From positions 744,001 through 808,000 of the forward strand of contig JASTWF010000088.1 in NCBI GenBank assembly GCA_030390025.1: a DNA stretch of 64,000 nt. Reading direction: 5' to 3'. This document shows, in pieces, positions 12,364-44,709 of the stretch. Source of the stretch: Squalus acanthias (Eukaryota). The notes beneath the pieces were generated by a model. That model saw only the letters and a list, made by a program, of their open reading frames with translations. It did no database searches and had not been told where the DNA came from. Position 1 is the first letter of the stretch; each line of letters opens with the position of its first letter. The translations under genes and the position numbers were made by a program.

Positions 12364-12463
12364 GATGGATCAGTTTCTTGCCCAAGTTCCCTTCTGTGGT
12401 TCGAGTTGCAGCTGGTTGTTCCGAATCACCCAAAGCGTGGAGACGATATCAAGTTGATTAAAT

Positions 12464-18600: not shown

Positions 18601-21600
18601 GTGGGGAGTTGGATGGGGTACAGTGTGTGTGTGAGGGTGGGGAGTTGGATGGGGTACAGTGTGTGTGAGGGTGGGGAGTTGGATGGGGTACAGTGTGTGT
18701 GAGGGTGGGGAGTTGGATGGGGTACAGTGTGTGTGAGGGTGGGGAGTTGGATGGGGTACAGTGTGTGTGAAGGGTGGGGAGTTGGATGGGGTACAGTGTG
18801 TGTGAGAGGGTGGGGAGTTGGATGGGGTACAGTGTGTGTGAGGGTGGGGAGTTGGATGGGGTACAGTGTGTGTGAGGGTGGGGAGTTGGATGGGGTACAG
18901 TGTGTGTGAGAGGGTGGGGAGTTGGATGGGGTACAGTGTGTGTGAGAGGGTGGGGAGTTGGATGGGGTACAGTGTGTGTGAGGGTGGGGAGTTGGATGGG
19001 GTACAGTGTGTGTGAGGGTGGGGAGTTGGATGGGGTACAGTGTGTGTGAGGGTGGGGAGTTGGATGGGTACAGTGTGTGTGAGAGGGTGGGGAGTTGGAT
19101 GGGGTACAGTGTGTGTGAAGGGTGGGGAGTTGGATGGGGTACAGTGTGTGTGAAGGGTGGGGAGTTGGATGGGGTACAGTGTGTGTGAGAGGGTGGGGAG
19201 TTGGATGGGGTACAGTGTGTGTGAAGGGTGGGGAGTTGGATGGGGTACAGTGTGTGTGAAGGGTGGGGAGTTGGATGGGGTACAGTGTGTGTGAAGGGTG
19301 GGGAGTTGGATGGGGTACAGTGTGTGTGAAGGGTGGGGAGTTGGATGGGGTACAGTGTGTGTGAAGGGTGGGGAGTTGGATGGGGTACAGTGTGTGTGAA
19401 GGGTGGGGAGTTGGATGGGGTACAGTGTGTGTGAAGGGTGGGGAGTTGGATGGGGTACAGTGTGTGTGAAGGGTGGGGAGTTGGATGGGGTACAGTGTGT
19501 GTGAAGGGTGGGGAGTTGGATGGGGTACAGTGTGTGTGTGAGGGTGGGGAGTTGGATGGGGTACAGTGTGTGTGAAGGGTGGGGAGTTGGATGGGGTACA
19601 GTGTGTGTGAGGGTGGGGAGTTGGATGGGGTACAGTGTGTGTGAGGGTGGGGAGTTGGATGGGGTACAGTGTGTGTGAAGGGTGGGGAGTTGGATGGGGT
19701 ACAGTGTGTGTGAGGGTGGGGAGTTGGATGGGGTACAGTGTGTGTGAAGGGTGGGGAGTTGGATGGGGTACAGTGTGTGTGAGGGTGGGGAGTTGGATGG
19801 GGTACAGTGTGTGTGAAGGGTGGGGAGTTGGATGGGGTACAGTGTGTGTGAAGGGTGGGGAGTTGGATGGGGTACAGTGTGTGTGAAGGGTGGGGAGTTG
19901 GATGGGGTACAGTGTGTGTGTGAGGGTGGGGAGTTGGATGGGGTACAGTGTGTGTGAAGGGTGGGGAGTTGGATGGGGTACAGTGTGTGTGAGGGTGGGG
20001 AGTTGGATGGGGTACAGTGTGTGTGAAGGGTGGGGAGTTGGATGGGGTACAGTGTGTGTGAAGGGTGGGGAGTTGGATGGGGTACAGTGTGTGTGAAGGG
20101 TGGGGAGTTGGATGGGGTACAGTGTGTGTGTGAAGGGTGGGGAGTTGGATGGGGTACAGTGTGTGTGAAGGGTGGGGAGTTGGATGGGGTACAGTGTGTG
20201 TGAGAGGGTGGGGAGTTGGATGGGGTACAGTGTGTGTGAAGGGTGGGGAGTTGGATGGGGTACAGTGTGTGTGAAGGGTGGGGAGTTGGATGGGGTACAG
20301 TGTGTGTGAAAGGGTGGGGAGTTGGATGGGGTACAGTGTGTGTGAAGGGTGGGGAGTTGGATGGGGTACAGTGTGTGTGAAGGGTGGGGAGTTGGATGGG
20401 GTACAGTGTGTGTGAGAGGGTGGGGAGTTGGATGGGGTACAGTGTGTGTGAGGGTGGGGAGTTGGATGGGGTACAGTGTGTGTGAAGGGTGGGGAGTTGG
20501 ATGGGGTACAGTGTGTGTGAAGGGTGGGGAGTTGGATGGGGTACAGTGTGTGTGTGAAGGGTGGGGAGTTGGATGGGGTACAGTGTGTGTGAAAGGGTGG
20601 GGAGTTGGATGGGGTACAGTGTGTGTGAAGGGTGGGGAGTTGGATGGGGTACAGTGTGTGTGAGGGTGGGGAGTTGGATGGGGTACAGTGTGTGTGAAGG
20701 GTGGGGAGTTGGATGGGGTACAGTGTGTGTGAAGGGTGGGGAGTTGGATGGGGTACAGTGTGTGTGAAGGGTGGGGAGTTGGATGGGGTACAGTGTGTGT
20801 GAGGGTGGGGAGTTGGATGGGGTACAGTGTGTGTGAAAGGGTGGGGAGTTGGATGGGGTACAGTGTGTGTGAAGGGTGGGGAGTTGGATGGGGTACAGTG
20901 TGTGTGAAGGGTGGGGAGTTGGATGGGGTACAGTGTGTGTGAAAGGGTGGGGAGTTGGATGGGGTACAGTGTGTGTGAAGGGTGGGGAGTTGGATGGGGT
21001 ACAGTGTGTGTGAAGGGTGGGGAGTTGGATGGGGTACAGTGTGTGTGTGAAGGGTGGGGAGTTGGATGGGGTACAGTGTGTGTGTGAAAGGGTGGGGAGT
21101 TGGATGGGGTACAGTGTGTGTGAAGGGTGGGGAGTTGGATGGGGTACAGTGTGTGTGAGAGGGTGGGGAGTTGGATGGGGTACAGTGTGTGTGAAGGGTG
21201 GGGAGTTGGATGGGGTACAGTGTGTGTGAGAGGGTGGGGAGTTGGATGGGGTACAGTGTGTGTGAAAGGGTGGGGAGTTGGATGGGGTACAGTGTGTGTG
21301 AAGGGTGGGGAGTTGGATGGGGTACAGTGTGTGTGAAAGGGTGGGGAGTTGGATGGGGTACAGTGTGTGTGAAGGGTGGGGAGTTGGATGGGGTACAGTG
21401 TGTGTGAAAGGGTGGGGAGTTGGATGGGGTACAGTGTGTGTGAAAGGGTGGGGAGTTGGATGGGGTACAGTGTGTGTGAGAGGGTGGGGAGTTGGATGGG
21501 GTACAGTGTGTGTGAAAGGGTGGGGAGTTGGATGGGGTACAGTGTGTGTGAAGGGTGGGGAGTTGGATGGGGTACAGTGTGTGTGAGGGTGGGGAGTTGG

Positions 21601-24600
21601 ATGGGGTACAGTGTGTGTGAAAGGGTGGGGAGTTGGATGGGGTACAGTGTGTGTGAAGGGTGGGGAGTTGGATGGGGTACAGTGTGTGTGAAAGGGTGGG
21701 GAGTTGGATGGGGTACAGTGTGTGTGAAAGGGTGGGGAGTTGGATGGGGTACAGTGTGTGTGAAAGGGTGGGGAGTTGGATGGGGTACAGTGTGTGTGAA
21801 AGGGTGGGAGTTGGATGGGGTACAGTGTGTGTGAAGGGTGGGGAGTTGGATGGGGTACAGTGTGTGTGAAAGGGTGGGGAGTTGGATGGGGTACAGTGTG
21901 TGTGAAGGGTGGGGAGTTGGATGGGGTACAGTGTGTGTGAAGGGTGGGGAGTTGGATGGGGTACAGTGTGTGTGTGAAAGGGTGGGGAGTTGGATGGCGT
22001 ACATTGTGTGTGTGAAAGGGTGGGGTGTTAGATGGGGTACAATATGGGTGGGGATTTGGATGGGGTACAGTGTGTGAGAGGGTGGGGAGTTGGATGGGGT
22101 ACAGTGTGTGTGAAAGGGTGGGGAGTTGGATGGGGAACAATGTATGTGAGAGGGTGGGACGTTGGATGGGCTACAGTGTGTATGAAAGGGTGGGGAGTTG
22201 GATGGGGTACAGTGTGTGTGAAAGGGTGGGGAGTTGGATGGGGAACAATGTGTGTGAGAGGGTGGGACGTTGGATGGGCTACAGTGTGTATGAAAGGGTG
22301 AGGAGTTGGATGGGGTACAGTGTGTGTGAAAGGGTGGGGAGTTGGATGGGGAACAGTGTGTGTGAAAGGGTGGGGAGTTGGATGGGGTACAGTGTGTGTG
22401 AAAGGGTGGGGAGTTGGATGGTGCACAGTGTCTGTAAAAGGGTGGGGAGTTGGATGGTGTACAGTGCCTGTAAAAGGGTGGGGAGTTGGATGGGGTACAG
22501 TGTGTGTGAAAGGGTGGGGAGTTGGATGGGGTACAGTGTGTGTGTGAAGGGTGGGGAGTTGGATGGGGTACAGTGTGTGTATGAAAGGGTAGGGAGTTAG
22601 ATGGGTTACAGTGTGTGTGAAAGGGTGGGGAGTTGGATGGGGAGCAGTGTGTGTGTGAGAGGTGGGTAGTTGATGGGGTACAGTGTGTGTGAAAGGGTGG
22701 GGAGTTGGATGTGGTACAGTGTGTGTGAGTGTGGGGAGTTGGATGGGGTACAGTGTGTGTGTGAGTGTGGGGAGTTGGATGGGGTACAGTGTGTGTGAAA
22801 GGGTGGGGAGTTGGATGGGGTACAGTGTGTGTGAGAGGGTGGGGAGTTGGATGGGGTACAGTGTGTGTGAAGGGTGGGGAGTTGGATGGGTACAGTGTGT
22901 GTGTGAAAGGGTGGGGAGTTGGATGGGGTACAGTGTGTGTGAGGGTGGGGAGTTGGATGGGGTACAGTGTGTGTGAAGGGTGGGGAGTTGGATGGGGTAC
23001 AGTGTGTATGAGGGTGGGGAGTTGGATGGGGTACAGTGTGTGTGAAAGGGTGGGGAGTTGGATGGGGTACAGTGTGTGTGAAGGGTGGGGAGTTGGATGG
23101 GGTACAGTGTGTGTGAAGGGTGGGGAGTTGGATGGGGTACAGTGTGTGTGAAAGGGTGGGGAGTTGGATGGGGTACAGTGTGTGTGAGAGGGTGGGGAGT
23201 TGGATGGGGTACAGTGTGTGTGAAGGGTGGGGAGTTGGATGGGGTACAGTGTGTGTGTGAAGGGTGGGGAGTTGGATGGGGTACAGTGTGTGTGAAGGGT
23301 GGGGAGTTGGATGGGGTACAGTGTGTGTGAAGGGTGGGGAGTTGGATGGGGTACAGTGTGTGTGAAGGGTGGGGAGTTGGATGGGGTACAGTGTGTGTGA
23401 AGGGTGGGGAGTTGGATGGGGTACAGTGTGTGTGAAGGGTGGGGAGTTGGATGGGGTACAGTGTGTGTGAAGGGTGGGGAGTTGGATGGGGTACAGTGTG
23501 TGTGAAGGGTGGGGAGTTGGATGGGGTACAGTGTGTGTGTGAAGGGTGGGGAGTTGGATGGGGTACAGTGTGTGTGAAGGGTGGGGAGTTGGATGGGGTA
23601 CAGTGTGTGTGAGGGTGGGGAGTTGGATGGGGTACAGTGTGTGTGAGAGGGTGGGGAGTTGGATGGGGTACAGTGTGTGTGAAAGGGTGGGGAGTTGGAT
23701 GGGGTACAGTGTGTGTGAAGGGTGGGGAGTTGGATGGGGTACAGTGTGTGTGTGAAGGGTGGGGAGTTGGATGGGGTACAGTGTGTGTGAAGGGTGGGGA
23801 GTTGGATGGGGTACAGTGTGTGTGTGAAGGGTGGGGAGTTGGATGGGGTACAGTGTGTGTGAAGGGTGGGGAGTTGGATGGGGTACAGTGTGTGTGAAAG
23901 GGTGGGGAGTTGGATGGGGTACAGTGTGTGTGAAGGGTGGGGAGTTGGATGGGGTACAGTGTGTGTGAGAGGGTGGGGAGTTGGATGGGGTACAGTGTGT
24001 GTGAAGGGTGGGGAGTTGGATGGGGTACAGTGTGTGTGAAGGGTGGGGAGTTGGATGGGGTACAGTGTGTGTGAAGGGTGGGGAGTTGGATGGGGTACAG
24101 TGTGTGTGAAAGGGTGGGGAGTTGGATGGGGTACAGTGTGTGTGAAGGGTGGGGAGTTGGATGGGGTACAGTGTGTGTGAGAGGGTGGGGAGTTGGATGG
24201 GGTACAGTGTGTGTGAGGGTGGGGAGTTGGATGGGGTACAGTGTGTGTGAAGGGTGGGGAGTTGGATGGGGTACAGTGTGTGTGAGGGTGGGGAGTTGGA
24301 TGGGGTACAGTGTGTGTGAGGGTGGGGAGTTGGATGGGGTACAGTGTGTGTGTGAAGGGTGGGGAGTTGGATGGGGTACAGTGTGTGTGAAGGGTGGGGA
24401 GTTGGATGGGGTACAGTGTGTGTGAAGGGTGGGGAGTTGGATGGGGTACAGTGTGTGTGAAGGGTGGGGAGTTGGATGGGGTACAGTGTGTGTGAAGGGT
24501 GGGGAGTTGGATGGGGTACAGTGTGTGTGAAGGGTGGGGAGTTGGATGGGGTACAGTGTGTGTGTGAAGGGTGGGGAGTTGGATGGGGTACAGTGTGTGT

Positions 24601-27276
24601 GAAGGGTGGGGAGTTGGATGGGGTACAGTGTGTGTGTGAAGGGTGGGGAGTTGGATGGGGTACAGTGTGTGTGAGGGTGGGGAGTTGGATGGGGTACAGT
24701 GTGTGTGAAGGGTGGGGAGTTGGATGGGGTACAGTGTGTGTGAGAGGGTGGGGAGTTGGATGGGGTACAGTGTGTGTGAAGGGTGGGGAGTTGGATGGGG
24801 TACAGTGTGTGTGAAGGGTGGGGAGTTGGATGGGGTACAGTGTGTGTGAAGGGTGGGGAGTTGGATGGGGTACAGTGTGTGTGAGGGTGGGGAGTTGGAT
24901 GGGGTACAGTGTGTGTGAAGGGTGGGGAGTTGGATGGGGTACAGTGTGTGTGAAGGGTGGGGAGTTGGATGGGGTACAGTGTGTGTGAGAGGGTGGGGAG
25001 TTGGATGGGGTACAGTGTGTGTGAAGGGTGGGGAGTTGGATGGGGTACAGTGTGTGTGAAGGGTGGGGAGTTGGATGGGGTACAGTGTGTGTGAGGGTGG
25101 GGAGTTGGATGGGGTACAGTGTGTGTGTGAGGGTGGGGAGTTGGATGGGGTACAGTGTGTGTGAAGGGTGGGGAGTTGGATGGGGTACAGTGTGTGTGAA
25201 GGGTGGGGAGTTGGATGGGGTACAGTGTGTGTGAAAGGGTGGGGAGTTGGATGGGGTACAGTGTGTGTGAAGGGTGGGGAGTTGGATGGGGTACAGTGTG
25301 TGTGAAGGGTGGGGAGTTGGATGGGGTACAGTGTGTGTGAAGGGTGGGGAGTTGGATGGGGTACAGTGTGTGTGAAGGGTGGGGAGTTGGATGGGGTACA
25401 GTGTGTGTGAAGGGTGGGGAGTTGGATGGGGTACAGTGTGTGTGAGGGTGGGGAGTTGGATGGGGTACAGTGTGTGTGTGAAAGGGTGGGGAGTTGGATG
25501 GGGTACAGTGTGTGTGAGGGTGGGGAGTTGGATGGGGTACAGTGTGTGAGAGGGTGGGGAGTTGGATGGGGTACAGTGTGTGTGAAGGGTGGGGAGTTGG
25601 ATGGGGTACAGTGTGTGTGAAGGGTGGGGAGTTGGATGGGGTACAGTGTGTGTGAAGGGTGGGGAGTTGGATGGGGTACAGTGTGTGTGAAGGGTGGGGA
25701 GTTGGATGGGGTACAGTGTGTGTGAGGGTGGGGAGTTGGATGGGGTACAGTGTGTGTGAAAGGGTGGGAGTTGGATGGGGTACAGTGTGTGTGAGGGTGG
25801 GGAGTTGGATGGGGTACAGTGTGTGTGAAAGGGTGGGGAGTTGGATGGGGTACAGTGTGTGTGAAAGGGTGGGGAGTTGGATGGTGCACAGTGTCTGTAA
25901 AGGGTGGGGAGTTGGATGGTGTACAGTGCCTGTAAAAGGGTGGGGAGTTGGATGGGGTACAGTGTGTGTGAAAGTGTGGGGAGTTGGATGGGGTACAGTG
26001 TGTGTGTGAAGGGGTGGGGAGTTGGATGGGGTACAGTGTGTGTATGAAAGGGTAGGGAGTTAGATGGGTTACAGTGAGTGTGAAAGGGTGGGGAGTTGGA
26101 TGGGGAGCAGTGTGTGTGTGAGAGGCTGGGTATTTGTTTGGGGTACAGTGTGTGAAAGGGTCGGGATTTGGATGCTGTACATTGTGTGTGAGTGTGGGGA
26201 GTTGGATGGGGTACAGTGTGTGTGTGAGTGTGGGGAGTTGGATGGGGTACAGTGTGTGTGAAAGGCTGGGGAGTTGGATGGGGTACAGTGTTTGTGAGAG
26301 GGTGGGGAGTTGGATGGGGTACAGTGTGTGTGAAAGGGTGGGGAGTTGGATGGGTACAGTGTGTGTGTGAAAGGGTGGGGAGTTGGATGGGGTACAGTGT
26401 GTGTGAGGGTGGGGAGTTGGATGGGGTACAGTGTGTGTGAAAGGGTGGGGAGTTGGATGGGTACAGTGTGTGTGAGGGTGGGGAGTTGGATGGGGTACAG
26501 TGTGTGTGAAGGGTGGGGAGTTGGATGGGGTACAGTGTGTGTGAAGGGTGGGGAGTTGGATGGGGTACAGTGTGTGTGTGAAGGGTGGGGAGTTGGATGG
26601 GGTACAGTGTGTGTAAAGGGTGGGGAGTTGGATGGGGTACAGTGTGTGTGTGAGGGTGGGGAGTTGGATGGGGTACAGTGTGTGTGAAGGGTGGGGAGTT
26701 GGATGGGGTACAGTGTGTGTGTGAAGGGTGGGGAGTTGGATGGGGTACAGTGTGTGTGTGAAGGGTGGGGAGTTGGATGGGGTACAGTGTGTGTGAAAGG
26801 GTGGGGAGTTGGATGGGGTACAGTGTGTGTGTGAAGGGTGGGGAGTTGGATGGGGTACAGTGTGTGTGAAAGGGTGGGGAGTTGGATGGGGTTCAGTGTG
26901 TGTGAAGGGTGGGGAGTTGGATGGGGTACAGTGTGTGTGTGAAAGGGTGGGGAGTTGGATGGGGTACAGTGTGTGTGTGAAGGGTGGGGAGTTGGATGGG
27001 GTACAGTGTTTGTGTGAAAGGGTGGGGAGTTGGATGGGGTACAGTGTGTGTGTGAAAGGGTGGGGAGTTGGATGGGGTACAGTGTGTGTGTGAAAGGGTG
27101 GGGAGTTGGATGGGGTACAGTGTGTGTGAAAGGGTGGGGAGTTGGATGGGGTACAGTGTGTGTGAAAGGGTGGGGAGTTGGATGGGGTACAGTGTGTGTG
27201 TGAGAGGGTGGGGAGTTGGATGGGTTACACTGTGTATGTGAAAGAGCAGGGAGTTGGATGGGATACAGTGTGTGTG
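12679..27276 (+). repeat. Same ~35-bp G-rich satellite, right of the LTR element
   Basis: Same unit resumes immediately after the LTR and ends at about 27276. Confidence 0.98.
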
Positions 27277-27356
27277 TTAAAGGATTACAAACAGTCCATT
27301 CATTTCTGAAATGATCCAGCAGTCTTCACTATGAAATGGCTTGTCCCTGCTTGGCG

Positions 27357-30055
27357 AGAGAGAGAGAAAGAAAGTGAGGTAGAAGGACAGAGGGAGAGAG
27401 GGGGTGAGGGGGAGTAAGAGAGAGAGAGTTAGGGGAGAGAGAGAGAGAAAGGAGGGAGAGAGCAAGGAGGAAGGCGGGAGAGAGAGGGAAAGGGAGAGGG
27501 TGAGGATAAGGGAGAGACGAGGGAGCGGGAGAGTGGGAAATGGCGAGGGAGAGGGAGAGTGAGTGGGTGAAGGTGAGCGAATGGGAGAAGGAGAGAGAGA
27601 AAGACCGAGGGAGAGTGTGAGGGAGAGGGCGATCTAGTGGGAGAGGGAGGGCAAGGGAGAGGGAGAGAGAGCGAGAAAGGGAAAAGGTGAGGGAGGGGGA
27701 GAGAGAGAGAGAGAGGGAGATGGAAATGGTGAGGGAGATAGAGGGAGAGGGACAGAGAGAGAGGGTGAGGGAAAGAGGGAGGAATAGAGGGAGAGGGATA
27801 GAGAGAGAGGGTGAGGGAAAGAGGGAGAGGGTGAGGGAAAGGGAGAGGAATAGAGAGAGAGAGAGAACAAAAGAGGAGAGGGAGTGGGAGAGGGCAAGGG
27901 AGAGAGAGAGGGTGAGGGAGATGGAGAGGCCAAGAGTGAGTGTGAGAGCGAGGAAGAGGAAGAGTGTGACGGAGAGAGAGGGGGAAATTGAGGGAGTGGG
28001 AGAGAGAGGGAGTGGGAATGAGAGAGAGTGGGAACGAGAATAAGAGCGAGTGAGGGAGATGGCAAAGGAGAGAGAGAGAGAGTGAGCGAGAGAGTGAGTG
28101 GGAGGGAGAGAGGGAGAAAGGGAAATGGCGTGGGAGTTGGTGTGGGTGAGGAATAGTTAGAGGATGATGGAAAGGGTGTGAGACAGAGAGGGAGTGGGTG
28201 AGGGTGAGAGAAAGAGGAAAAGAGAGAGAGGGAGAGTGAGGGTGAGTGAGTGGGAGGAAGAGAGGAACACAGGGAGAGAGCGAGGGAAAGGGCGAGGGAG
28301 AGAGAGTAAGGGGGAGGGAGTGAGTGAGAGAAAGAGGGAGCGAGAGGGAAAGAGCGTGGGAGTGGGAGTGGGTGAGAGAGGGAGTGGGAGAGAGGGGGGC
28401 GAGAGGGAGGGAGGGAGAGGGAGGTGGAGTGGGAGAGGGCAAGGGAGAGGGAGCGGGAGAGGCCGAGAGTGAGGGTGAGAGCGCGGAAGAGGAAGAGTGC
28501 GTGGGAGAGTGATCGGGGGAAGGTGAGGGAGTGAGAGAGAGAGGGCAAGGGAGAGGGAGTGGGAAAGGGAATGGGAGAGGGAGAGTGAGTGAGGGAGAGG
28601 ATGAGAGAGTGTGAGGGAGAGGGCAAGGGATACAGAGAGTGAGGGAGAGGGTGCGAGAGAGGGAACGAGGGAAAGGGAGAGGGAGTGTGAGGGAGAGAGA
28701 GAGAGGGAAAGGGCAAGGGAGATGAAGTGGGTGAGGGAGAGACTGAGAGGACGAGGGAGCGAGTGAGTGGGAGGAAGAGAGGAACACGAAGAGGGAGAGA
28801 GGGAAAGGGCGGGGGAGAGAAAATGGGTGAGGGAGGGGGAGAGAGAGGGAAAGGGAGAGGGATAGGAAAGAACGAGGGAGAGAGCGAGGGAGAGTGTGAA
28901 TGTGAGGGAGGGAGAGGGAGAGCGAAAGGGCGATGGAGGGGGAGAGAGAGAGAGAGGGAGGGCGAGGGAGAAGGTGACGGAGTGGGAGAGAGCGCGGGAT
29001 ATGGAGAGGGAAAGGGACAGTGAGAGAGAGGACGAGAGAGAGGGAGAGTAAGTGGGAGGGAGATGGAGTGGGTGAGGGACAGAGTGAGAGTGAGGGCGAG
29101 GGAGAGAGTGAGGGAAAGGAAAATCGCAAGGGAGAGGGCGAGCCTGAGTAAGGGCGAGGGAGTGGGTGAGGAAGAAGGTGTGGATGAGGGAGAGGGAGAG
29201 TGAGAGGCCAAGAGCGAGGGTGAGGGACAGAGCAAGGAAGAGGAAGAATGTGAGGAAGAGGGAGGGCGAGAGAGAGGGCGAGGGAAAGGGGGAAAGAGAG
29301 AGGGAGTGAGGGAGACAGAGGGAGTGGGTGAGGGCGAGGGAGAGTGTGAGAGAGGGAGAGAGTGGGCGAGGGAGTGGGAAAGGGAATGAGAGACAGTGAG
29401 GGATAAGGGCGAGGGAAGGGAAGAGAGTGAGGGAGTGGGTGAGGGAGTGAGAAAGTGAGAGAGAGGGAGAGGGCAAGGGTAAGTGAGGAAGAGGGTGAAA
29501 GAGAGCGAGAGGGAGAGAGTGTGGATGATGGTGAGAGACAGTCAGTGGAAGGGAGAGGGAGAGAGAGCAAGGGAGAGGGAGTGCTTGAGGGAGAGAGAGA
29601 GGGAAGGGGCAAGTGAGATGGAGTGGGTGAGGGAGAGGGAAAGGGCGAGGGAGAGAGAGGGATAAGGTGAAAGCAGGGGGGGGTGAGTGGGGGGAGAGGG
29701 AAAGAGTTTGGGAGTGGGTGAGGGAGAAGGAGAGAGAGTACGAGGGAGAGGGAGTTGGAGAGGGAGAGGTGAGAGTGAGGGAGAGCATTAGAGAGAGAGA
29801 GAGAGCACAAAGGAAAGTGAGGAAGAGGGTAAGAGAGAGTGGGAGGAAGGGAGAGAGCGTGAGGGAGAGGGGGAGAGCGCGAGTGAGGGAGATGGTGAGA
29901 GAGTCAGTGGCAGGGAGAGAGGGAGAGATAGAGTGAGGGAGATGGTGAGTCAGTGGCAGGGAGAGGAAGAGGGGAGGGAGAGAGCGGGAGAGGAAGAGGG
30001 GAAGGGAGAGAGAGAGAGTCAGTGCGAGGGAGAGAGGGAAAGGGAGAGGGAGGAG
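27357..30055 (+). repeat. GA-rich polypurine low-complexity tract (~2.7 kb)
   Basis: Almost entirely G/A with GAGGGAGAG and GAGTGGG motifs; no fixed period. Confidence 0.95.
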
Positions 30056-30156
30056 GCTTGACACGACCTTTATGCGCTGCCTTAGTTTAGCCCCCAAGGG
30101 TGACTGGGACAGCAGATGGAATGTGGGGCAGAGCAGACGGTCGTTCGCAGGGTTTA

Positions 30157-30304
30157 CCCAGTAACTTCTGATGCTGCGGTGTGTCTAATTTCTATTGGTT
30201 GGTTGGACTGTGTGAGGTGATACTGTGCCCTTTGCTGTTTGCCCTGAAACTGAAAGCTCACACAATCCAAGCTCAGGGACTTTCCATCACACGCCTTCCC
30301 AGAA
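30157..30304 (+). promoter_or_regulatory. Candidate distal immune enhancer: X1/X2, Y, ISRE, NF-kB and GAS motifs
   Basis: CCCAGTAACTTCTG(ATGC) 30157-30170; 20-nt spacer; TCTATTGG 30191-30198; GAAACTGAAAGC 30246-30257; GGGACTTTCC 30276-30285; TTCCCAGAA 30296-30304. Confidence 0.7.
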
Positions 30305-30399
30305 ATAGCTCTCCGAAATAATCAACAATCTGGCAGCCCTAGAGACAGCTCAGAACTAACTCGGATCGTGTGACAATAGCAACATGTCAAACACCACTG

Positions 30400-30906
30400 C
30401 ACACACACACACACACACTCTCACACACTCACTCGCACAAACACATTCTCACACACACACAAAAACACACTCTTATACACACACACTCACACACACACAA
30501 AAACACACTCTTATACACACACACTCACACACACACAAAAACACACTTATACACACACACACAAACACATTCTCACACACACACAAACACACACTCATAC
30601 ATACTCATACACTCGCACACACAAACACATTCTCACTCACTCACACAAACACACACTTATACACACTCTCACACAAACACTCACATACACACTCACTCGC
30701 ACACACAAACACACTCACACACTCGCTCGTACAAACACACTCACACACACACAAACACACACTTATACACACTCACTCGCACACACAATCACACACTCAC
30801 TCGCACAAACACACACACAAACGCACACTCTTATACACACACACTCACTCACATACACTCGCACACACAAACACACTCTCACACACTCACTCACACAAAC
30901 ACACAC
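30400..30906 (+). repeat. CA-rich degenerate microsatellite
   Basis: (CA)n with ACTC/AAAC interruptions; resumes at about 31351-31530 after the SINE. Confidence 0.95.
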
Positions 30907-30910
30907 AGTG

Positions 30911-31350
30911 TCAGCTATGGCTCAGTTGGTAGCACACTGGCTCCGAGTCGGAAGGTTGTGTGTTCAAGTCCCACCCAAGGGACTTGAGCCCATTAAAGCT
31001 AGGCTGACACTCCAGTGCTGTGCTGAGGGAGTGCTGCACTGTCGGAGGTGCCGTCTTTCGGATGAGACGTTAAACCTCAGGTGGATGTAAAAGATCCCAT
31101 GGCGCTATGGAGCAGGGGAATTATCCCGGTGTCCTCACCAATATTTATCCCTCAACCAACATTACAAAAACAGATTATCTGGTCATTATTACATTGCTGT
31201 TTGTGGGACTTTGCTGTGTGCAAATTGGCTGCCGTGTTTCCCACATTACAACTGTGACTCCACTTCAAAAGTACTTCTTGGCTGTAAAGAGCTTTGAGAT
31301 GTCCGGTGGTCGTGAAAGGCGCTATATAAATGCAAGTCTTTCTTTCTTTC
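30911..31350 (+). mobile_element. tRNA-headed SINE of the Deu-domain (SacSINE1/AmnSINE1-like) group, near full length
   Basis: A box TGGCTCAGTTGG 30918-30929, B box GTTCAAGTCC 30962-30971, central CAGATTATCTGGTCATTAT...GCAAATTGGCTGCCG, LINE-like tail AAAGGCGCTATATAAATGCAAG(TCTT)n. A second copy lies at 39980. Family name is from recognition only. Confidence 0.85.
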
Positions 31351-31534
31351 ATACACTCACACAGACACATATTCTCACACATTCACTCATATACTCACAT
31401 AAACACACTCACATACAAGTACATGCTCTTACTCACTTACTTGCACATAAACACACTGTCACATATTCACATACAGACTCAGATACACACACACATTCAA
31501 GAAGACACACTCGCACACAATCTCACATACATAT

Positions 31535-32178
31535 CAGAGTAAAGGCCCAGGCCCACAGTATCAGAGTAAAGGCTCAGGCCCTCAGTCCCACAGTATGACC
31601 GTAAACGTCCAGGCTCTCAGTCCCACAGTATCAGAGTAAAGGCCCAGACCCTCAGTCCCACAGTATGACAGTAAAGGCCCAGGCTCTCAGTCCCACAGTA
31701 TCAGAGTAAAGGCCCAGACCCTCAGTCCCACAGTATGACAGTAAAGGTCCAGGCTCTCAGTCCCACAGTATCAGAGTAAAGGCCCAGACCCTCAGTCCCA
31801 CAGTATGACAGTAAAGGCCCAGGCCCACAGTATGACAGTAAAGGCCCAGGCCCACAGTATGACAGTAAAGGCCCAGACCCTCACCCACAGTATGACAGTA
31901 AAGACTCAGGCCCTCAGTCCCACAGTATGACAGTAAAGGCCCAGACCCTCAGTCCCACAGTATGACAGTAAAGGCCCAGACCCTCAGTCCCACAGTATGG
32001 CAGTAAAGGCCCAGGCCCACAGTATGACAGTAAAGGCCCAGACCCTCAGGCCCACAGTATGACAGTAAAGGCCCAGACCCTCAGTCGCACAGTATCAGAG
32101 TAAAGACTCAGGCCCTCAGTATGACAGTAAAGGCCCAGGCTCTCAGTCCCACAGTATGACAGTAAAGGCCCAGGCCTT
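31535..32178 (+). repeat. Minisatellite, 30/37-bp unit CACAGTATGACAGTAAAGGCCCAG(ACCCTCAGTCC)
   Basis: About 18 tandem units of two lengths. Confidence 0.93.
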
Positions 32179-32185
32179 GAGCCAT

Positions 32186-32535
32186 ACTGTTGGAGGAGGA
32201 TGGTGTGGTCAACCGTGTCAAAGTCTGCAGACAGGTCAAGAAAGTGAGGAGGGACAGTTTACCACGGTCACAGTCACATGGATTGTCATTTGTGACTTTG
32301 ATAAGGGCCGTTTCAGTGCTGTGTCACGGGCGGAAACCTGATTGGAGGGGTTCAAACATGGAGTTGCGGAAAAGATGGGCACGGATTCGGAAGACGACAA
32401 CACGTTCAAGGACTTGAGAGAGGAAAGGGAGGTTGGAGATGGGGCGGTAGTTTGCAAGGACAGAGGGGTCAAGGGTGGGTTTTTTGAGGAAGAGGGTTGA
32501 TGACGGCAGATTTGACAGGGAGGGGGACAGGAGCT
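32186..32535 (-). mobile_element. L2/CR1-group LINE reverse-transcriptase fragment
   Basis: Minus frame reads LKKPTLDPSVLANYRPISNLPFLSQVLERVV...LQSGFRP, then DHTILL; degenerate and truncated. Confidence 0.85.
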
Positions 32536-32933
32536 GAGGAGAGGTCTCAGTATCTGGTGACGAGCTGGTCCCGTGGTTGAACCTGCCGGTAATTCCCAGA
32601 GACAGCAAGGCTCCTCCCTCCCCAGCAGTACACAGGTCACTCAATGCTGCTGTGGAAAGTCCCAGTGATTCACCGTAGCAGATAACTGAGCAAGAAACAA
32701 ATAAAAAGAACAGAAATATCACTGAGGCAGGGGAGGAGTGGAGCGGGCGGTTAAACACGAGATCAACTGAAAACATCAGGATGGCAGCAAACGTGACACA
32801 GACACTGTCCTGTTTGCAGTATATCGTCCCGATCCCAGACTCGGCAGATAACCTGTACACAACATGGTCACAAACTTTACAATCTGAGCTCTGCCTCTCA
32901 CTTTGACAGACGTTATCAACAGGAGCAAACTCA

Positions 32934-33315
32934 CAGACTGTAGTTAGACTGTAAACAGTTTCACCCTGTGATCTCACTGCCAGACTGTAGTTAGACTGTA
33001 AACAGTTTCACCCTGTGAGCTCACTGCCAGACTGTAGTTAGACTGTAAACAGTTTCACCCTGTGAGCTCACTGCCAGACTGTAGTTAGACTGTAAACAGT
33101 TTCACCCTGTGAGCTCACTGCCAGATTGTAGTTGGACTGTAAACAGTTTCACCCTGTGAGCTCACTGCCAGACTGTAGTTATACTGTAAACAGTTTCACC
33201 CTGTGAGCTCACTGCCAGACTGTAGTTAGACTGTACACAGTTTCACCCTGTGAGCTCACTGCCAGACTGTAGTTAGACTGTACACAGTTTCACCCTGTGA
33301 GCTCACTGCCAGACT
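32934..33315 (+). repeat. 47-bp minisatellite CAGACTGTAGTTAGACTGTAAACAGTTTCACCCTGTGAGCTCACTGC (first segment)
   Basis: 8 tandem units; continues at 35305-35412, about 35492-35586 and about 36138-36184 between insertions. Confidence 0.95.
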
Positions 33316-35304
33316 ACATAGATACATAGAACAGTACAGCACAGTACAGGCCCTTCGGCGCTCGATGTTGTGCCGAGCATTGTCCGAGACCAAGATCAAG
33401 CTATCACACTCCCTATCACTCTGGTGTGCTCCATGTGCTTATCCAATAACCGCTTGAAAGTTCCTAAAGTGTCCGACTCCACTATCACAGCAGGCAGTCC
33501 ATTCCACACCCCAACCATTCTCTGAGTAAAGAATCTACCTCGGACATCCCTTCTATATCTCCCCCCATGCACCTTATAGTTATGCCCCCTTGTAACAGCT
33601 GCCTCTACCCGAGGAAATAGTCTCTGAACATCCACTCTATCTATCCCCCTCATCATCTTATAAACCTCTATTAAGTTGCCTCTCATCCTCCTCCGCTCTA
33701 AAGAGAAAAGCCCCAACTCCCTCAGCCTTTCCTCATAAGACCTCCCCCCCAAACCAGGCAGCATCCTGGTAAATCTCCTTTGCACTCTTTCCAATGCTTC
33801 CACGTCCTTCCTATAGTGAGGTGACCAGAACTGCACACAATATTCCAAATGTGGTCTCACCAAGGTCCTGTACAGTTGCAGCATAACCTCACGGTTCTTA
33901 AACTCAAACCCTCTGTTAATAAACGCCAACACACCATAGGCCTTCTTTACTGCTCTATCCACTTGAGTGGCAACCTTCAGAGATCTGTGGATATGAACCC
34001 CCAGATCCCTCTGCTCCTCCACGTTCCTCAGAACCCTGCCGTTGACCCTGTAATCCTTATTCAAATTTGCCCTACCAAAATGAATCACCTCGCACTTATC
34101 AGGGTTAAATTCCATCTGCCATTTTTCGGCCCAGCTCTGCATCCTATCAATGTCTCTTTGCAGCCTACAACTGCCCTCCACCTCATCCACTACTCCACCA
34201 ATCTTGGTGTCATCAGCAAATTTACTGATCCACCCTTCAGTCCCCTCCTCCAAGTCATTGATAAAAATCACAAACAGCAGAGGACCCAGCACCGACCCCT
34301 GTGGCACACCGCTGGTAACTGGTCTCCAGTCCGAAAATGTTCCATCCACCACCACCCTCTGCCTTCTATGAGATAGCCAGTTACTTATCCAATCGGCCAA
34401 ATTTCCCTCTATCCCACAACTCCTTACTTTCTTCATGAGACGACCATGGGGAACCTTATCAAACGCCTTACTAAAATCCATGTATACGACATCAACTGCT
34501 CTACCTTCATCTACACACTTAGTTACCTCCTCAAAGAATTCAATCAAATTTGTTAGGCAAGACTTACCCTTCACGAATCCGTGTTGACTATCCCTGATTA
34601 AGTTGCCCCTTTCCAAATGGTCATAAATCCTATCCCTCAGGACCTTTTCCATTATCTTACCAACCACCGAAGTAAGACTAACCGGCCTATAATTACCAGG
34701 GTCATTCCTATTTCCTTTCTTGAAGAGAGGAACAACATTCGCCACTCTCCAGTCCTCTGGCACCATCCCCGTGGACAGTGAGGACCCAAAGATCAAAGCC
34801 AGAGGCTCTGCAATCTCCTCCCTTGCCTCCCAAAGAATCCTAGGATATATCCCATCTGGCCCAGGGGACTTATCGACCCTCAGGTTTCAAAATTGCTGAA
34901 ACATCTTCCCTCAGAACATCTACCACCTCCAGCCTATCCACCTTTATCACACTCTCATCCTCAAGAACATGGCCCCTCTCCTCGGTGAACACTGACGAAA
35001 AGTATTCATTCATCACCTCTCCTATCTCTTCTGACTCCATGCACAAGTTCCCACTACTGTCCTTGACCGGCCCTACCCTCACCCTGGTCATTCTTTTATT
35101 TCTCACATAAGAGTAAAAAGCCTTGGGGTTTTTCTTGATCCGACCCGCCAAGGACTTCTCATGCCCCCTCCTAGCTCTCCTAAGCTCTTTTTTTAGCTCA
35201 TTCCTTGCTACCTTGTACCCCTCAATCGACCCAACTGAACCTTGTTTTCTCATCCTTACATACGCTTCCTTTTTCCTCTTGACTAGACATTCAACCTCTT
35301 TTGT
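33316..35304 (-). mobile_element. 5'-truncated CR1 LINE with ORF2 RT domain (466-aa open stretch 33396-34796; frameshift near 34870)
   Basis: NYRPVSLTS, QHGF, DFSKAFD, GVPQGSVLGP, FADD, RPHLEYC motifs; 3' tail of TCTATGT(A) repeats at 33316-33330. Confidence 0.95.
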
Positions 35305-36184: not shown

Positions 36185-37003
36185 TCATGTGTGATCAATG
36201 ACACTGATCATCACTGCCCAGGGTCCCCCAGTAATGTGATCAATGATACTGATCGTCACTGCCCAGGGTCTCCCAGTAATGTGACCAATGACACTGATCA
36301 TCACTGCCCAGGGTCTCCCAGTAATGTGATCAATGACACTGATCGTCACTGCCCAGGGTCTCCCAGTAATGTGATCAATGACACTGATCGTCACTGCCCA
36401 GGGTCCCCCAGTAATGTGATCAATGATACTGATCGTCACTGCCCAGGGTCCCCCAGTAATGTGACCAATGACACTGATCGTCACTGCCCAGGGTCTCCCA
36501 GTAATGTGACCAATGACACTGATCGTCACTGCCCAGAGTCTCCCAGTAATGTGATCAATGACACTGATCGTCACTGCCCAGGGTCCCCTAGTAATGTGAT
36601 CAATGACACTGATCGTCACTGCCCAGGGTCTCCCAGTAATGTGACCAATGACACTGATCATCACTGCCCAGGGTCTCCCAGTAATGTGATCAATGACACT
36701 GATCGTCACTGCCCAGGGTCTCCCAGTAATATGACCAATGACATTGATCGTCACTGCCCAGGGTCTCCCAGTAATGTGATCAATGACACTGATCGTCACT
36801 GCCCAGGGTCTCCCAGTAATGTGATCAATGACACTGATCGTCACTGCCCAGGGTCTCCCAGTAATGTGACCAATGACACTGATCATCACTGCCCAGGGTC
36901 TCCCAGTAATGTGATCAATGACACTGATCGTCACTGCCCAGGGTCTCCCAGTAATGTGACCAATGACACTGATCGTCACTGCCCAGGGTCTCCCAGTAAT
37001 GTG
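36185..37003 (+). repeat. 45-bp minisatellite GTGATCAATGACACTGATCGTCACTGCCCAGGGTCTCCCAGTAAT
   Basis: About 18 near-identical units. Confidence 0.97.
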
Positions 37004-37049
37004 TGATCGAACGTCTGTGCTTATGTGTGCTGTCACAAACGCTGATTTC

Positions 37050-37790
37050 AAAATTAGAAAAGCAGAGATTGGGAAATGTTGGTATTCACAGGGACCTGGG
37101 TGTCCTTGTACACAAATCACTGAAAGCTAACTTGCAGGTACAGGAAGCAATTAGGAAAGCAAATGGTATGTTGGCCTTTATTACAAGAGGATTTGAGTAG
37201 AAGAGTAAAGACGTCTTACTGCAATTATATAGGGCCCTGGTGAGACCGTACCTGGAGTATTGTGTAGTTTTGATCTCCTTACCTGAGGAAGGATATACTT
37301 GCCATAGAGGGAGTGCAACGAAGGTTCACCAGACTGGTTCCTGGGAGGGGGAATTGTCCTGCCAGGAGAGATTGACAAGACTAGGCCTATATTCTCTAAA
37401 GTTTAGAAGAATGAGAGGTGATCTCATTGAAACATATAAAATACTTACAGGGCTTGACAGGGTAGATACAGGGAGGATGTTTCCCCTGGCTGGGGAGTCT
37501 AGAACCAGGGGTCACAGTCTCAGAATAAGGGGTCGGCCATATAGGACTGAGAGGAGGAGAAATTTCTTCACTCAGAGGGTGGTGAATCTTTGGAATTCTC
37601 TACCCCAGAGGGCTGTGGAGGCTCAGTCGTTGAGTATATTCAAGACAGAGATCGATAGATTTTTGAATATTACGGGATGTGGGGATAGTGCAGGAAAGTG
37701 GAGTTGAGGTAGAGGATCAGCCATGATCTTATTGAATGGCGGAGCAGGCTCGAAGGGCCAAATGGCCGACTCCTGCTCCTGTTCATTATC
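37050..37790 (+). mobile_element. Degenerate CR1 LINE 3' fragment
   Basis: RDLGVLVHKSLK...RPYLEYC...RRMRGDLIETYKIL...FFTQRVVNLWNSLP with a stop and frameshifts; 3' UTR GGAGCAGGCTCGAAGGGCC...CTCCTGCTCCT. Confidence 0.9.
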
Positions 37791-39684: not shown

Positions 39685-39979
39685 CTGTGGGTGAAAGCAG
39701 AAAGAAACATTAGTCTGTGACCAGATGAGGTGAGGAAACCCCCAGTGGTGGAGCGCTTTGGGAACCATAGGTGCAAAGTCACCTGTTCCTCCCAAGCACG
39801 CTCCACTCACCACACGTCATGTCCCAAGTTACAAATACTGTATCCCAAAATTTTATTTTCTGAAAGAAACCTGCCTGGGTTAATGTTAGGTAAATAGGTC
39901 AGCACCTTCAGAAACACGGTACAGAGATTCTATCCAGAGTGCTAACGTGTTACTGTATCACAGCACATTATTTTAGGCG

Positions 39980-40648: not shown

Positions 40649-40921
40649 CCAGCTGAATCTCTTTCATATCGCCGTTGTGTTGCATCTTGCAGGTATACTT
40701 CACTCCACTTTGGGGGATGAAGTCCACAAACCTGGTGAGCTTGAAGCTCCAGTCTGACTCGAAGGAGAGGTCAGACTGGTTGGCATTGGGGATGCTGTTT
40801 CCATTCTGCAACAGCTCCAGCTTGATGTTGGGTGGGCTGAAATCTTTGGCATGGCACAGCAGAACATTAGATTCGCCTTCCTTTGCGGGTTTGTAGGTAT
40901 ACACCTGCACCTGTGGAGCAG
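40649..40921 (-). CDS. b2m: Beta-2-microglobulin exon 2 (Ig C1 domain)
   Basis: (T)APQVQVYTYKPAKEGESNVLLCHAKDFSPPNIKLELLQNG...QSDLSFESDWSFKLTRFVDFIPQSGVKYTCKMQHNG; b2m hallmarks P-x-V-Q-V-Y, two Cys, SDLSF-x-x-DWSF; tctctag| acceptor and G|gtgagt donor; 273 nt, phase 1/1. Confidence 0.97.
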
Positions 40922-42736: not shown

Positions 42737-42841
42737 GGTCCGAATGGTCCTATCTGGGTTTTAAATTATTTTCTAAACTCTGCTCAGGAGGCGGCGCACT
42801 CACCTCGGGACCCGGAACACCCAAACACTGAGGTTACTTAC

Positions 42842-42890
42842 TCGCCAGGCAGAGGGTCAGGACTGAGGCCAGGACCACGATCTTCAGCAT
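42842..42890 (-). CDS. b2m: Beta-2-microglobulin exon 1 (signal peptide MLKIVVLASVLTLCLA)
   Basis: Kozak-like GCCATCATG; 16 hydrophobic codons plus 1 nt, then gtaagt; phase 1 fits exon 2. Spliced CDS is 49+273+11 = 333 nt, 110 aa. Confidence 0.9.
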
Positions 42891-42987
42891 GATGGCTGTA
42901 GGCTCACTCCGGGTTCTCAGGCTCGGTTCGGGTTCTCGGGTTCGGTTTCAGGCTCCGCTCCAGTCGCTTCTCGCTCACTCTCTGCTC

Positions 42988-43215
42988 TTCACTTCCTGGG
43001 TTCCCGATTAAACTGCAACAAACAAGCGCCCGAGCACCAATCAGAAAAAGACTGGCCGCGCTCCGCCCCGCCCACTCACCCAATTCCAGCCAATCGCAAT
43101 ATTCATCACCACCGAGTCATCGGTCTCCGGGTAAAAGACCGCTGAACAGTTTGCGAATCGGGAGAGTGAGAGAGGGCGGGTCGGCGAGGGCAGCAGGAGC
43201 GGCGAAAGCGAAAGC
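42988..43215 (-). promoter_or_regulatory. b2m: b2m proximal promoter (ISRE, X1/X2-Y module, extra CCAAT boxes, GC boxes)
   Basis: CpG-rich; GAAAGCGAAAGC 43204-43215 (+); minus strand CCCGGAGACCGATG 43131-43118 overlapping TGACTC, 20-nt spacer, GCGATTGG 43097-43090; CTGATTGG 43044-43037; GGGCGGGGCGG 43073-43063; GGAAGTGAA near 42996-42988. Confidence 0.85.
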
Positions 43216-43252
43216 CAGGGACAAGTAATCGCTGGACTCACATATTTACAGC

Positions 43253-44706: not shown

Positions 44707-44709
44707 AGA

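What the first reader, a model, noticed from the sequence alone, without database searches (positions are those of the whole stretch)
30157..30304. Orphan MHC-type enhancer island (X1/X2-20 bp-Y, ISRE, NF-kB, GAS) about 12.6 kb downstream of the b2m start
Seen: a ~340-bp unique island between GA and CA low-complexity DNA holds, within 150 bp, CCCAGTAACTTCTGATGC, exactly 20 nt, TCTATTGG (same spacing as in the b2m promoter), then GAAACTGAAAGC, GGGACTTTCC and TTCCCAGAA. Established: mammalian MHC class I and B2M promoters are driven by kB + ISRE + SXY (RFX, CREB/ATF, NF-Y with NLRC5 or CIITA), and distal X-Y modules act as enhancers in the mammalian class II region. I saw no canonical kB or GAS site in the b2m proximal promoter here and no exon attached to the island. 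Inference: a distal interferon/NF-kB-responsive enhancer for b2m or a neighbouring MHC gene in a cartilaginous fish, splitting the regulatory inputs between promoter and 3' enhancer.
Basis: partly seen in the sequence, partly recalled or inferred. Interest (0 to 1): 0.85.

Follow-up and report, generated by a model that had tools for sequence, protein, structure and literature searches.

The report
Possible interferon/NF-kB enhancer beside shark b2m
A 345-base single-copy stretch about 12.7 kb past the start of a shark beta-2-microglobulin gene holds a tight cluster of immune-response binding motifs and is kept in related species, so it may be a distant switch for that gene, but nothing here shows that it works.

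Summary
All five motif strings are at the stated places. One detail is wrong: the gap between the quoted X and Y strings is 16 nt, not 20 (19 nt to the ATTGG core). The register does equal that of the b2m promoter in this window.

The island (30056-30400) lies between an AGAGGG array and a CA array. It is unique in the window. It sits 12.66 kb 3' of the b2m ATG at 42890 on the minus strand.

It is not a dispersed repeat. In a relative, one contig at depth 14.7 covers 30060-30390 at 95.2% identity, while the SINE next door reaches depths in the millions. None of the 10 listed differences falls in the 57 motif bases; 6 differences were not listed.

In 25 kb of complex DNA, the only two strict ISREs and the only two X-Y composites lie in the island and the b2m promoter. 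An ISRE, kB and GAS cluster this tight is expected 2.4e-4 to 2.5e-3 times per window.

No RNA, chromatin or cross-shark synteny test was possible. My reading is a plausible distal inducible enhancer (about 0.4); chance remains a serious rival (about 0.35). The same scan noted similar motif islands elsewhere in this genome (unchecked).

The parts
30056..30400 (.). Single-copy complex island between two low-complexity arrays
   Evidence: Sequence. Entropy segmentation. No second copy in the window. One contig of organism D covers 30060-30390 with 16 differences and no gaps; one contig of organism B covers 30062-30291 with 0 differences. CpG observed/expected is 0.46. No Rfam match.
30157..30165 (+). 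X1-like string CCCAGTAAC; its AGTAAC fits the RFX half-site form RGYAAC (consensus recalled, not from a call)
   Evidence: It aligns in register with CCCGGAGAC of the b2m promoter.
30169..30174 (+). X2-like string TGATGC; a weak, non-canonical CRE/AP-1-like position
   Evidence: No TGACG, TGACGTCA or TGASTCA in the island. It aligns with TGACTC of the b2m promoter.
30191..30198 (+). Y box TCTATTGG (inverted CCAAT; core ATTGG at 30194-30198)
   Evidence: It is in the same register as GATTGG of the b2m promoter.
30246..30257 (+). ISRE GAAACTGAAAGC
   Evidence: One of only 2 matches to GAAANNGAAASY in the window; the other is in the b2m promoter at 43204.
30276..30285 (+). NF-kB decamer GGGACTTTCC
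   Evidence: The same decamer also occurs at 32654-32663 (minus strand), inside a high-copy repeat.
30296..30304 (.). GAS-type palindrome TTCCCAGAA (TTCNNNGAA)
   Evidence: One of 3 matches in the window.
27389..30052 (.). AGAGGG-type low-complexity array forming the left border of the island
30400..30907 (.). CA dinucleotide array forming the right border of the island
43090..43215 (-). b2m proximal promoter elements used as the in-window comparator: ISRE at 43204-43215 and X-Y composite at 43090-43128
   Evidence: CpG observed/expected is 0.88 over 42891-43300.
42842..42890 (-). b2m exon 1 (ATG at 42890, leader peptide, donor GT at 42841-42840)
   Evidence: The leader resembles those of shark b2m proteins P0001, P0002 and P0005.
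40649..40921 (-). b2m exon 2 (Ig C1 domain)

Best explanation
The island is a single-copy non-coding cis-regulatory module. It is most likely a distal, cytokine-inducible enhancer lying 3' of b2m.

Inferred mechanism: IRF or ISGF3 factors bind the ISRE, NF-kB binds GGGACTTTCC, and STAT dimers bind TTCCCAGAA. These three sites sit within 59 bp. An adjacent RFX/NF-Y-type X-Y platform has the same register as the one in the b2m promoter, and could dock the same enhanceosome cofactors (an NLRC5- or CIITA-like protein).

Looping to the b2m promoter 12.7 kb away would add NF-kB and STAT input that the roughly 370-bp promoter lacks. b2m is the only host gene seen in the 64-kb window, so it is the likeliest target.

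Shown here: motif presence and positions, single copy, retention in relatives, and absence of kB and GAS at the promoter. Inferred: factor binding, inducibility, looping and the target gene.
For: 1. All motifs are present within 148 bp.
2. In 25,077 complex bases the strict ISRE occurs twice only, in the island and in the b2m promoter.
3. The X-Y composite RGNRAC-N2-5-TGAY-N18-23-ATTGG also occurs twice only in 64 kb, at the same two places, against 0.069 expected per 25 kb. That pattern was written after seeing both sites.
4. An ISRE, kB and GAS triple this tight is expected 2.4e-4 to 2.5e-3 times per 25 kb.
5. The best island-promoter diagonal is exactly the X-Y module in the same register.
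6. The promoter has no kB site even at one mismatch, and no GAS. It is hemmed in by a 21-bp array starting at 43258.
7. The island is single-copy and retained. Words of it are held by 4 other species labels. One contig in D is 95.2% identical over 331 nt, and none of its 10 listed differences falls in the 57 motif bases. One contig in B is identical over 230 nt.
8. Intergenic X-Y sites bound by CIITA are known in the human class II region. In PMC4381081 (passages read) there are 12 such sites, and functional XY boxes span 46-50 bp.
Against: - No functional evidence of any kind exists here. No listed holder is an RNA run, and no chromatin or reporter data are available.
- The island-promoter similarity is not significant on its own: 49 of 300 shuffles reach the ungapped score, and 23 to 86 of 400 reach the gapped scores.
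- 95% identity to D may simply be neutral. Every neighbouring stretch is repeat, so no neutral yardstick could be had.
- 6 of the 16 differences in D were not listed and could lie in motifs.
- Only fragments were laid for organisms C and E.
- X2 is not a CRE, and no S box was identified.
- The order X-Y, then ISRE, kB, GAS differs from the classical kB, ISRE, S, X, Y promoter order in either orientation.
- The exact kB decamer also sits in a high-copy repeat at 32654, so such strings do arise without this function.
- The motif set was chosen after looking, and the same reader flagged many motif islands in this genome (21 notes fit the look-up).
- CpG observed/expected of 0.46 is near the bulk level.
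Confidence: 0.4

Rival explanations
1. Chance. The island is neutral unique DNA left between expanding microsatellites. The motif cluster is a coincidence picked out after the fact from a large vocabulary of immune motifs.
For:
- kB, GAS and CCAAT matches occur at or below chance frequency in the window as a whole: 3, 3 and 36 seen against 3.6, 5.8 and 67 expected.
- The exact kB decamer recurs in a repeat.
- Island-promoter alignment scores lie within the shuffle range.
- No S box or canonical X2 was found.
- 95% identity can be neutral in slowly evolving genomes (established knowledge, not measured here).
Against: - The specific triple is expected only 2.4e-4 to 2.5e-3 times per window.
- It coincides with an X-Y composite expected 0.014 to 0.069 times per window.
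- It lies beside the one gene in the window whose promoter uses the same ISRE and X-Y logic.
- None of the 10 listed substitutions in D hits a motif, where about 1.7 would be expected if 10 changes were spread evenly over 331 nt with 57 motif bases (arithmetic mine).
Confidence: 0.35
2. Relic or orphan promoter. The island once drove, or still drives, a transcript of its own: a lost b2m or MHC paralogue, or a non-coding RNA. The body of that gene was destroyed or displaced by satellite expansion. On the minus strand the order is GAS, kB, ISRE, CCAAT, which resembles an inducible promoter.
For: - The X-Y register is identical to that of the b2m promoter.
- Unchecked scan notes report further b2m-like genes 172 and 186 kb beyond the window and another 'enhancer or relic promoter' island at +218 kb.
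- Large satellite blocks abut the island.
Against: - No leader-like ORF or exon lies on either side. The only ORFs run into low-complexity DNA.
- No TATAWA is present.
- CpG observed/expected is 0.46 against 0.88 at the real b2m promoter.
- A gapped alignment to promoter plus exon 1 is not above shuffles: 86 of 400 reach it.
- No listed holder is on record as RNA, which is weak evidence.
Confidence: 0.15
3. An old fragment of a transposable element, for example an LTR that carried its own kB, ISRE and GAS sites. It is now too diverged to recognise, and may or may not have been co-opted.
For: - Nearly everything around it is TE or satellite: a SINE at 30910-31224, LINE fragments at 32324-32977, 33396-34796 and 37003-37707, and a gypsy element at 8422-12363.
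- kB-like strings occur in the SINE (31205) and in the repeat at 32654.
Against: - No similarity to anything else in the window beyond 11-16 nt.
- At 80% likeness the contigs of four related runs lay on the island at single-contig depth (3.1 and 14.7), against 1e5 to 1e7 for the true repeats beside it.
Confidence: 0.1

Closest known systems
Distal X-Y / S-X-Y modules of the mammalian MHC class II region (intergenic CIITA/RFX-bound sites such as XL4 and XL7, and the HLA-DRA upstream module)
   Same: An X1-X2-Y arrangement away from any promoter, inside an MHC-linked region, with the same X-Y register as a nearby promoter. PMC4381081 (passages read) reports 12 intergenic CIITA sites in the class II locus, and 46-50 bp XY lengths for functional sites.
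   Different: Those sites are defined by factor occupancy, which is untested here. The mammalian modules are not described as packed with kB, ISRE and GAS sites. The island lies 3' of b2m, not among class II genes. No S box was identified. X2 is non-canonical.
Mammalian MHC class I and B2M proximal promoters (enhancer A/kB, ISRE and SXY, transactivated by NLRC5)
   Same: The same vocabulary: kB, ISRE, X1, X2 and Y. PMC4374748 (passages read) places S within 16 bp and Y at 20-22 bp from the X box, and shows that spacing matters.
   Different: Those modules sit just upstream of a transcription start, in the order kB, ISRE, S, X, Y. The island has no attached exon, has a different order, adds a GAS, and is 12.7 kb from the nearest start. 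That paper found the S box to be essential for NLRC5 specificity, and no S box was found here.
The b2m proximal promoter in this same window (43090-43215, minus strand)
   Same: An ISRE (GAAAGCGAAAGC against GAAACTGAAAGC) plus an X-Y composite in the identical register; 31 of 50 bases are identical across the X-Y span.
   Different: The promoter is CpG-rich (observed/expected 0.88 against 0.46). It has its ISRE upstream of X-Y and lacks kB and GAS. The overall sequence similarity is not above shuffles.
Compact cytokine-inducible modules that combine GAS, kB and ISRE/IRF sites (for example at IRF1, CXCL10 and ICAM1; recalled, no paper read here)
   Same: STAT, NF-kB and IRF sites sit within about 60 bp, which allows synergy between interferon and TNF or TLR signals.
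   Different: Those are promoter-proximal and experimentally defined. Here the sites are distal and untested.

Membership tests
MHC enhanceosome (S-X-Y) module | X1 box: an RFX-type site | tested here: inconclusive
   AGTAAC fits the recalled half-site form RGYAAC, and CCCAGTAAC aligns with CCCGGAGAC of the b2m promoter. No published weight matrix was available in text, so no score could be given.
MHC enhanceosome (S-X-Y) module | X2 box: a CRE/ATF-type site directly after X1 | tested here: not met
   The island has no TGACG, TGACGTCA or TGASTCA. The string at the X2 position is TGATGC. The in-window b2m promoter has TGACTC there.
MHC enhanceosome (S-X-Y) module | Y box (inverted CCAAT) at a fixed distance from X | tested here: met
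   ATTGG lies 19 nt after the X2 hexamer, the same as in the b2m promoter. The span from X1 start to ATTGG end is 42 nt. The published 46-50 bp XY length (PMC4381081) and the 20-22 bp X-Y distance (PMC4374748) use motif borders shown only in figures, so the match to them is approximate.
MHC enhanceosome (S-X-Y) module | S box about 16 bp upstream of X (needed for NLRC5 specificity, PMC4374748) | not tested
   The S consensus is given only in figures that I could not see. I saw no obvious shared string upstream of X1 between the island and the b2m promoter beyond TTTACCC.
MHC enhanceosome (S-X-Y) module | Occupancy by RFX, NF-Y and CIITA or NLRC5 | not testable with these tools
   This needs ChIP or CUT&RUN in shark cells.
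Interferon/NF-kB-inducible enhancer | ISRE, kB and GAS consensus sites close together | tested here: met
   GAAANNGAAASY at 30246, GGGRNWYYCC at 30276 and TTCNNNGAA at 30296 span 59 nt. The expected chance rate is 2.4e-4 to 2.5e-3 per 25 kb.
Interferon/NF-kB-inducible enhancer | Evolutionary constraint on the sites | tested here: inconclusive
Interferon/NF-kB-inducible enhancer | Open chromatin, inducible activity and contact with a target promoter | not testable with these tools
   No chromatin, reporter or conformation data are available. No listed holder of the stretch is on record as RNA.
Dispersed repeat / transposable element | Many related copies in the genome | tested here: not met
   One copy in the window. 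Single contigs at depth 3.1 and 14.7 in two relatives, against summed depths of 1e5 to 1e7 on the SINE and LINE pieces beside it, at 80% likeness.
CpG-island promoter | CpG observed/expected near 0.6 or more, plus an attached first exon | tested here: not met
   CpG observed/expected is 0.46 against 0.88 for the b2m promoter. No exon-like ORF is attached.

The most novel reading that the evidence does not exclude
In cartilaginous fish, b2m regulation is split in two. A minimal ISRE plus X-Y promoter gives NLRC5/IRF-type input. A separate 3' enhancer, built on a second X-Y platform, adds NF-kB and STAT input. If so, distal enhanceosome-type (X-Y) enhancers, so far described in the mammalian class II region, would date back to the common ancestor of jawed vertebrates, and would already have served the b2m gene while it was still linked to the MHC.
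Probability: 0.25. Interest if true: 0.65.

Novelty: new member of a known kind. Interest (0 to 1): 0.4.

Why it matters
In elasmobranchs b2m sits inside the MHC, next to the class II genes (PMC10751288, abstract and passages read). Its regulation there therefore bears on how coordinated control of antigen-presentation genes first arose.

My searches found no paper describing a distal regulatory element for a shark MHC gene. PMC10751288 contains none of the words promoter, enhancer, SXY or ISRE. The one paper most likely to discuss the shark b2m promoter, PMC3805034, is not held.

If the island works as proposed, it would be a compact, testable example of an ancient distal X-Y element combined with kB, ISRE and GAS sites. 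If it does not, it is a caution about reading function from motif clusters.

Tried and rejected
1. Homology between the island and the b2m promoter (duplication relic). Ungapped and gapped alignments always pick the X-Y module, but the scores lie within the shuffle range: 49 of 300, 37 of 400, 23 of 400 and 86 of 400 shuffles reach them. A stricter scoring gave only 12-24 nt matches, with 1274 of 2000 shuffles as good. I rejected this as evidence of common descent.

2. Dispersed repeat: rejected.

3. Structured RNA gene: no Rfam match at E up to 1 in 29900-31600.

4. Hidden exon: six-frame translation shows no open frame confined to the island. The listed ORFs run into low-complexity DNA.

5. 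Orthologous loci in other sharks.

6. An exact 40-base search of the metagenome contigs gave 0 hits.

7. b2m exon 3. A pattern search for a short last coding exon found nothing, so the 3' end of the gene is unmapped and the distance from the island to the end of the gene is unknown.

8. Organisms C and E. They hold 0.23 and 0.13 of the sampled words, but read laying placed only short fragments of their contigs on 30207-30400. I take these to be partial matches of CA-rich contigs and drew nothing from them.

9. Literature on a 3' or distal B2M enhancer: nothing relevant appeared among the 10 papers listed of the 61 matched.

Supplementary files, including the weight matrices of PMC4381081 and PMC4374748, were closed. 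A proper matrix score of the X-Y module could therefore not be computed.

Full report
**What is there.**
- CCCAGTAACTTCTGATGC at 30157-30174
- TCTATTGG at 30191-30198
- GAAACTGAAAGC at 30246-30257
- GGGACTTTCC at 30276-30285
- TTCCCAGAA at 30296-30304

The stated gap of 'exactly 20 nt' is a miscount. 16 nt separate the two quoted strings, and 19 nt separate the X2 hexamer from the ATTGG core.

The island itself, 30056-30400, is about 345 bp of normal-complexity DNA. It lies between a 2.7-kb AGAGGG-type array (27389-30052) and a 0.5-kb CA array (30400-30907).

**Context.**
The window is mostly satellite and transposon.
- G/T-rich low-complexity blocks fill 1-8200, 12701-27300 and 44701-54600.
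- ORFs recurring every 73 bases fill 54.5-64 kb.
- A gypsy-type element with a 1313-codon ORF lies at 8422-12363 on the minus strand.
- LINE fragments lie at 32324-32977, 33396-34796 and 37003-37707.
- Two copies of one SINE lie at 30910-31224 and 39979-40318, 74.7% alike.

The only host gene I found is b2m, on the minus strand. Exon 1 is 42890-42842, with the ATG at 42890 and a GTAAGT donor. Exon 2 is 40921-40649.

The exon 2 product matches solved beta-2-microglobulin chains; the best is 6luo at E 2.8e-47. It is 79% identical to the closest database b2m proteins, those of Cetorhinus maximus and Ginglymostoma cirratum.

The island centre is therefore about 12.66 kb downstream of the b2m ATG and about 10.3 kb beyond exon 2. 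I could not map the short last coding exon, so the distance to the 3' end of the gene is unknown.

**The b2m promoter as an internal comparator.**
Only about 370 bp of unique DNA lie upstream of the ATG before a 21-bp tandem array starts at 43258. That stretch holds an ISRE (43204-43215) and an X-Y composite (43090-43128, minus strand). It holds no GGGRNWYYCC, even with one mismatch, and no TTCNNNGAA.

The best ungapped diagonal between the island and the promoter pairs 30153-30202 with 43135-43086. TTTACCC, the X1 half-site, the X2 hexamer and ATTGG all fall in the same register, with 31 of 50 bases identical. So 'same spacing as in the b2m promoter' is right.

That similarity is not significant on its own. 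49 of 300 dinucleotide shuffles reach the ungapped score. 37, 23 and 86 of 400 reach the three gapped scores. I therefore do not claim that the two share descent.

**Is the cluster more than chance?**

| Motif | Seen in 25,077 complex bases | Expected | Positions |
|---|---|---|---|
| kB GGGRNWYYCC | 3 | 3.6 | 30276, 32654, 39734 |
| ISRE GAAANNGAAA | 2 | 0.5 | 30246, 43204 |
| GAS TTCNNNGAA | 3 | 5.8 | 30296, 37840, 41876 |
| CCAAT | 36 | 67 | not listed |

Both ISRE hits also fit the stricter form GAAANNGAAASY.

Under a first-order Markov model of that DNA, an ISRE with both a kB and a GAS within 60 nt is expected 2.4e-4 times per 25 kb analytically. Two such cases appeared in 20 Mb of simulated sequence, which is 2.5e-3 per 25 kb.

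A composite pattern, RGNRAC-N2-5-TGAY-N18-23-ATTGG, hits the 64-kb window exactly twice: in the island and in the b2m promoter. The expectation is 0.069 per 25 kb. The stricter RGYAAC form hits the island only, against 0.014 expected.

These figures overstate the surprise, for three reasons.
- The X-Y pattern was written after seeing both sites.
- The same reader noted many motif islands in this genome (21 and 81 notes fit the look-ups).

The exact kB decamer also occurs in a high-copy repeat at 32654-32663.

**Copy number and retention.**
The island has no second copy in the window. Its sampled 31-letter words are held by the following:

| Organism | Share of words held |
|---|---|
| A (likely source) | 1.00 |
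| B | 0.57 |
| C | 0.23 |
| D | 0.13 |
| E | 0.13 |

B, C, D and E come from three other studies.

I laid the contigs of one run each of B, C, D and E on 29500-32500 at 80% likeness.
- Organism D has a single 433-nt contig at depth 14.7. It covers 30060-30390 with 16 differences and no gaps (95.2% identity).
- Organism B has a single contig covering 30062-30291 with no difference.
- The adjacent SINE and the repeat at 32126-32500 collect summed depths of 1e5 to 1e7.

The island is therefore not a dispersed repeat.

Ten of D's 16 differences were listed: 30144, 30180, 30181, 30213, 30220, 30270, 30271, 30275, 30288 and 30340. None falls in the 57 motif bases. Two fall in the X-Y spacer and one lies directly beside the kB site. 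The other six were not listed, so the result is only suggestive.

For C and E only short fragments were laid, and I draw nothing from them. Because every neighbouring stretch is repeat, there is no neutral yardstick, and 95% identity may be neutral.

**Other properties.**
- CpG observed/expected is 0.46, near the bulk value of 0.34-0.45 and far from the b2m promoter's 0.88.
- The island has no TATAWA, Sp1, AP-1, CRE, ETS, C/EBP, RUNX or CTCF-core match. It has one E-box form.
- No open frame is confined to the island.
- No Rfam match was found.
- No listed holder of the stretch is on record as RNA, which is weak evidence.

**Reading.**
The best-supported reading is a distal cytokine-inducible enhancer. 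IRF, NF-kB and STAT sites sit within 59 bp, next to an RFX/NF-Y-type X-Y platform in the same register as the b2m promoter. b2m is the likeliest target, because it is the only gene in the window and its short promoter lacks kB and GAS. I put this at about 0.4.

The rivals are:
- a chance cluster in neutral DNA (about 0.35);
- a relic or orphan promoter (about 0.15);
- an old, unrecognisable transposon fragment (about 0.1).

Unchecked scan notes report further b2m-like genes 172 and 186 kb beyond the window, and another kB/ISRE island at +218 kb. These keep other targets and the relic reading open.

**Comparison with what is known.**
Distal X-Y sites bound by CIITA are known in the human class II region. 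PMC4381081 (passages read) describes 12 intergenic sites and functional XY boxes of 46-50 bp with conserved spacing.

NLRC5-bound SXY modules have S within 16 bp and Y at 20-22 bp from X, and the S box is decisive for specificity (PMC4374748, passages read).

The island shares the vocabulary and the X-Y register. It fails the X2 test, no S box was identified, its motif order is non-classical, and it has no occupancy data. It therefore works like such a module at best; membership is unproven.

In elasmobranchs b2m is linked to the class II region (PMC10751288, abstract and passages read). That paper does not use the words promoter, enhancer, SXY or ISRE. Ohta et al. 2011 (PMC3805034) is not held. 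Whether it describes the shark b2m promoter I cannot say.

**Limits.**
- Supplementary files with the published weight matrices were closed.

Noticed in passing
window 30910-31224 and 39979-40318: Two copies of one SINE family on the + strand, 74.7% alike. One lies just right of the island's CA array. The other lies 3' of b2m exon 2, probably in intron 2 (the last exon is unmapped). In four related species the contigs laid on it sum to depths of 1e5 to 1e7, so it is a very abundant family.
   Followed up: partly
window 41800-42738: b2m intron 1 is largely an 18-copy 52-bp tandem array (94% matches). A 21-bp array of about 70 copies (43258-44710) begins only about 370 bp upstream of the b2m ATG. 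The gene's unique promoter is therefore boxed in by repeats.
   Followed up: partly
window 8422-12363 (minus strand): A gypsy-type retroelement with an uninterrupted 1313-codon gag-pol ORF and a high CpG observed/expected ratio (0.82 over 8101-12800). It looks young. It is embedded in a G/T-rich satellite.
   Followed up: no
window 54524-64000: ORFs that recur every 73 bases fill the last 9.5 kb after a 500-N gap (54024-54523), which suggests a 73-bp tandem satellite. G/T-rich low-complexity blocks (GC skew about 0.9) fill 1-8200, 12701-27300 and 44701-54600.
   Followed up: no
window 32654-32663 (minus strand) and 31205-31214: The exact kB decamer GGGACTTTCC recurs inside a high-copy repeat, and a one-mismatch version sits in the SINE. 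Canonical kB strings in this genome are therefore partly repeat-borne.
   Followed up: partly
window 42900-42960 (minus strand): The stretch just upstream of the b2m ATG, presumably 5' UTR, carries a run of GAAACCGAA / GAACCCGA-type repeats. A 12-nt stretch of it matches the island's ISRE region with one mismatch. Its meaning is unknown.
   Followed up: no
window 40649-40921 (minus strand): This b2m Ig exon is at most 79% identical to any b2m in the protein collection. Unchecked scan notes report more b2m-like genes within about 190 kb. This copy may be one of several paralogues.
   Followed up: no
window 36190-37003 and 32934-33315: Clean tandem arrays of 45 bp (18 copies, 95% matches) and 47 bp (8 copies, 97% matches) lie between the island and b2m.
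   Followed up: no
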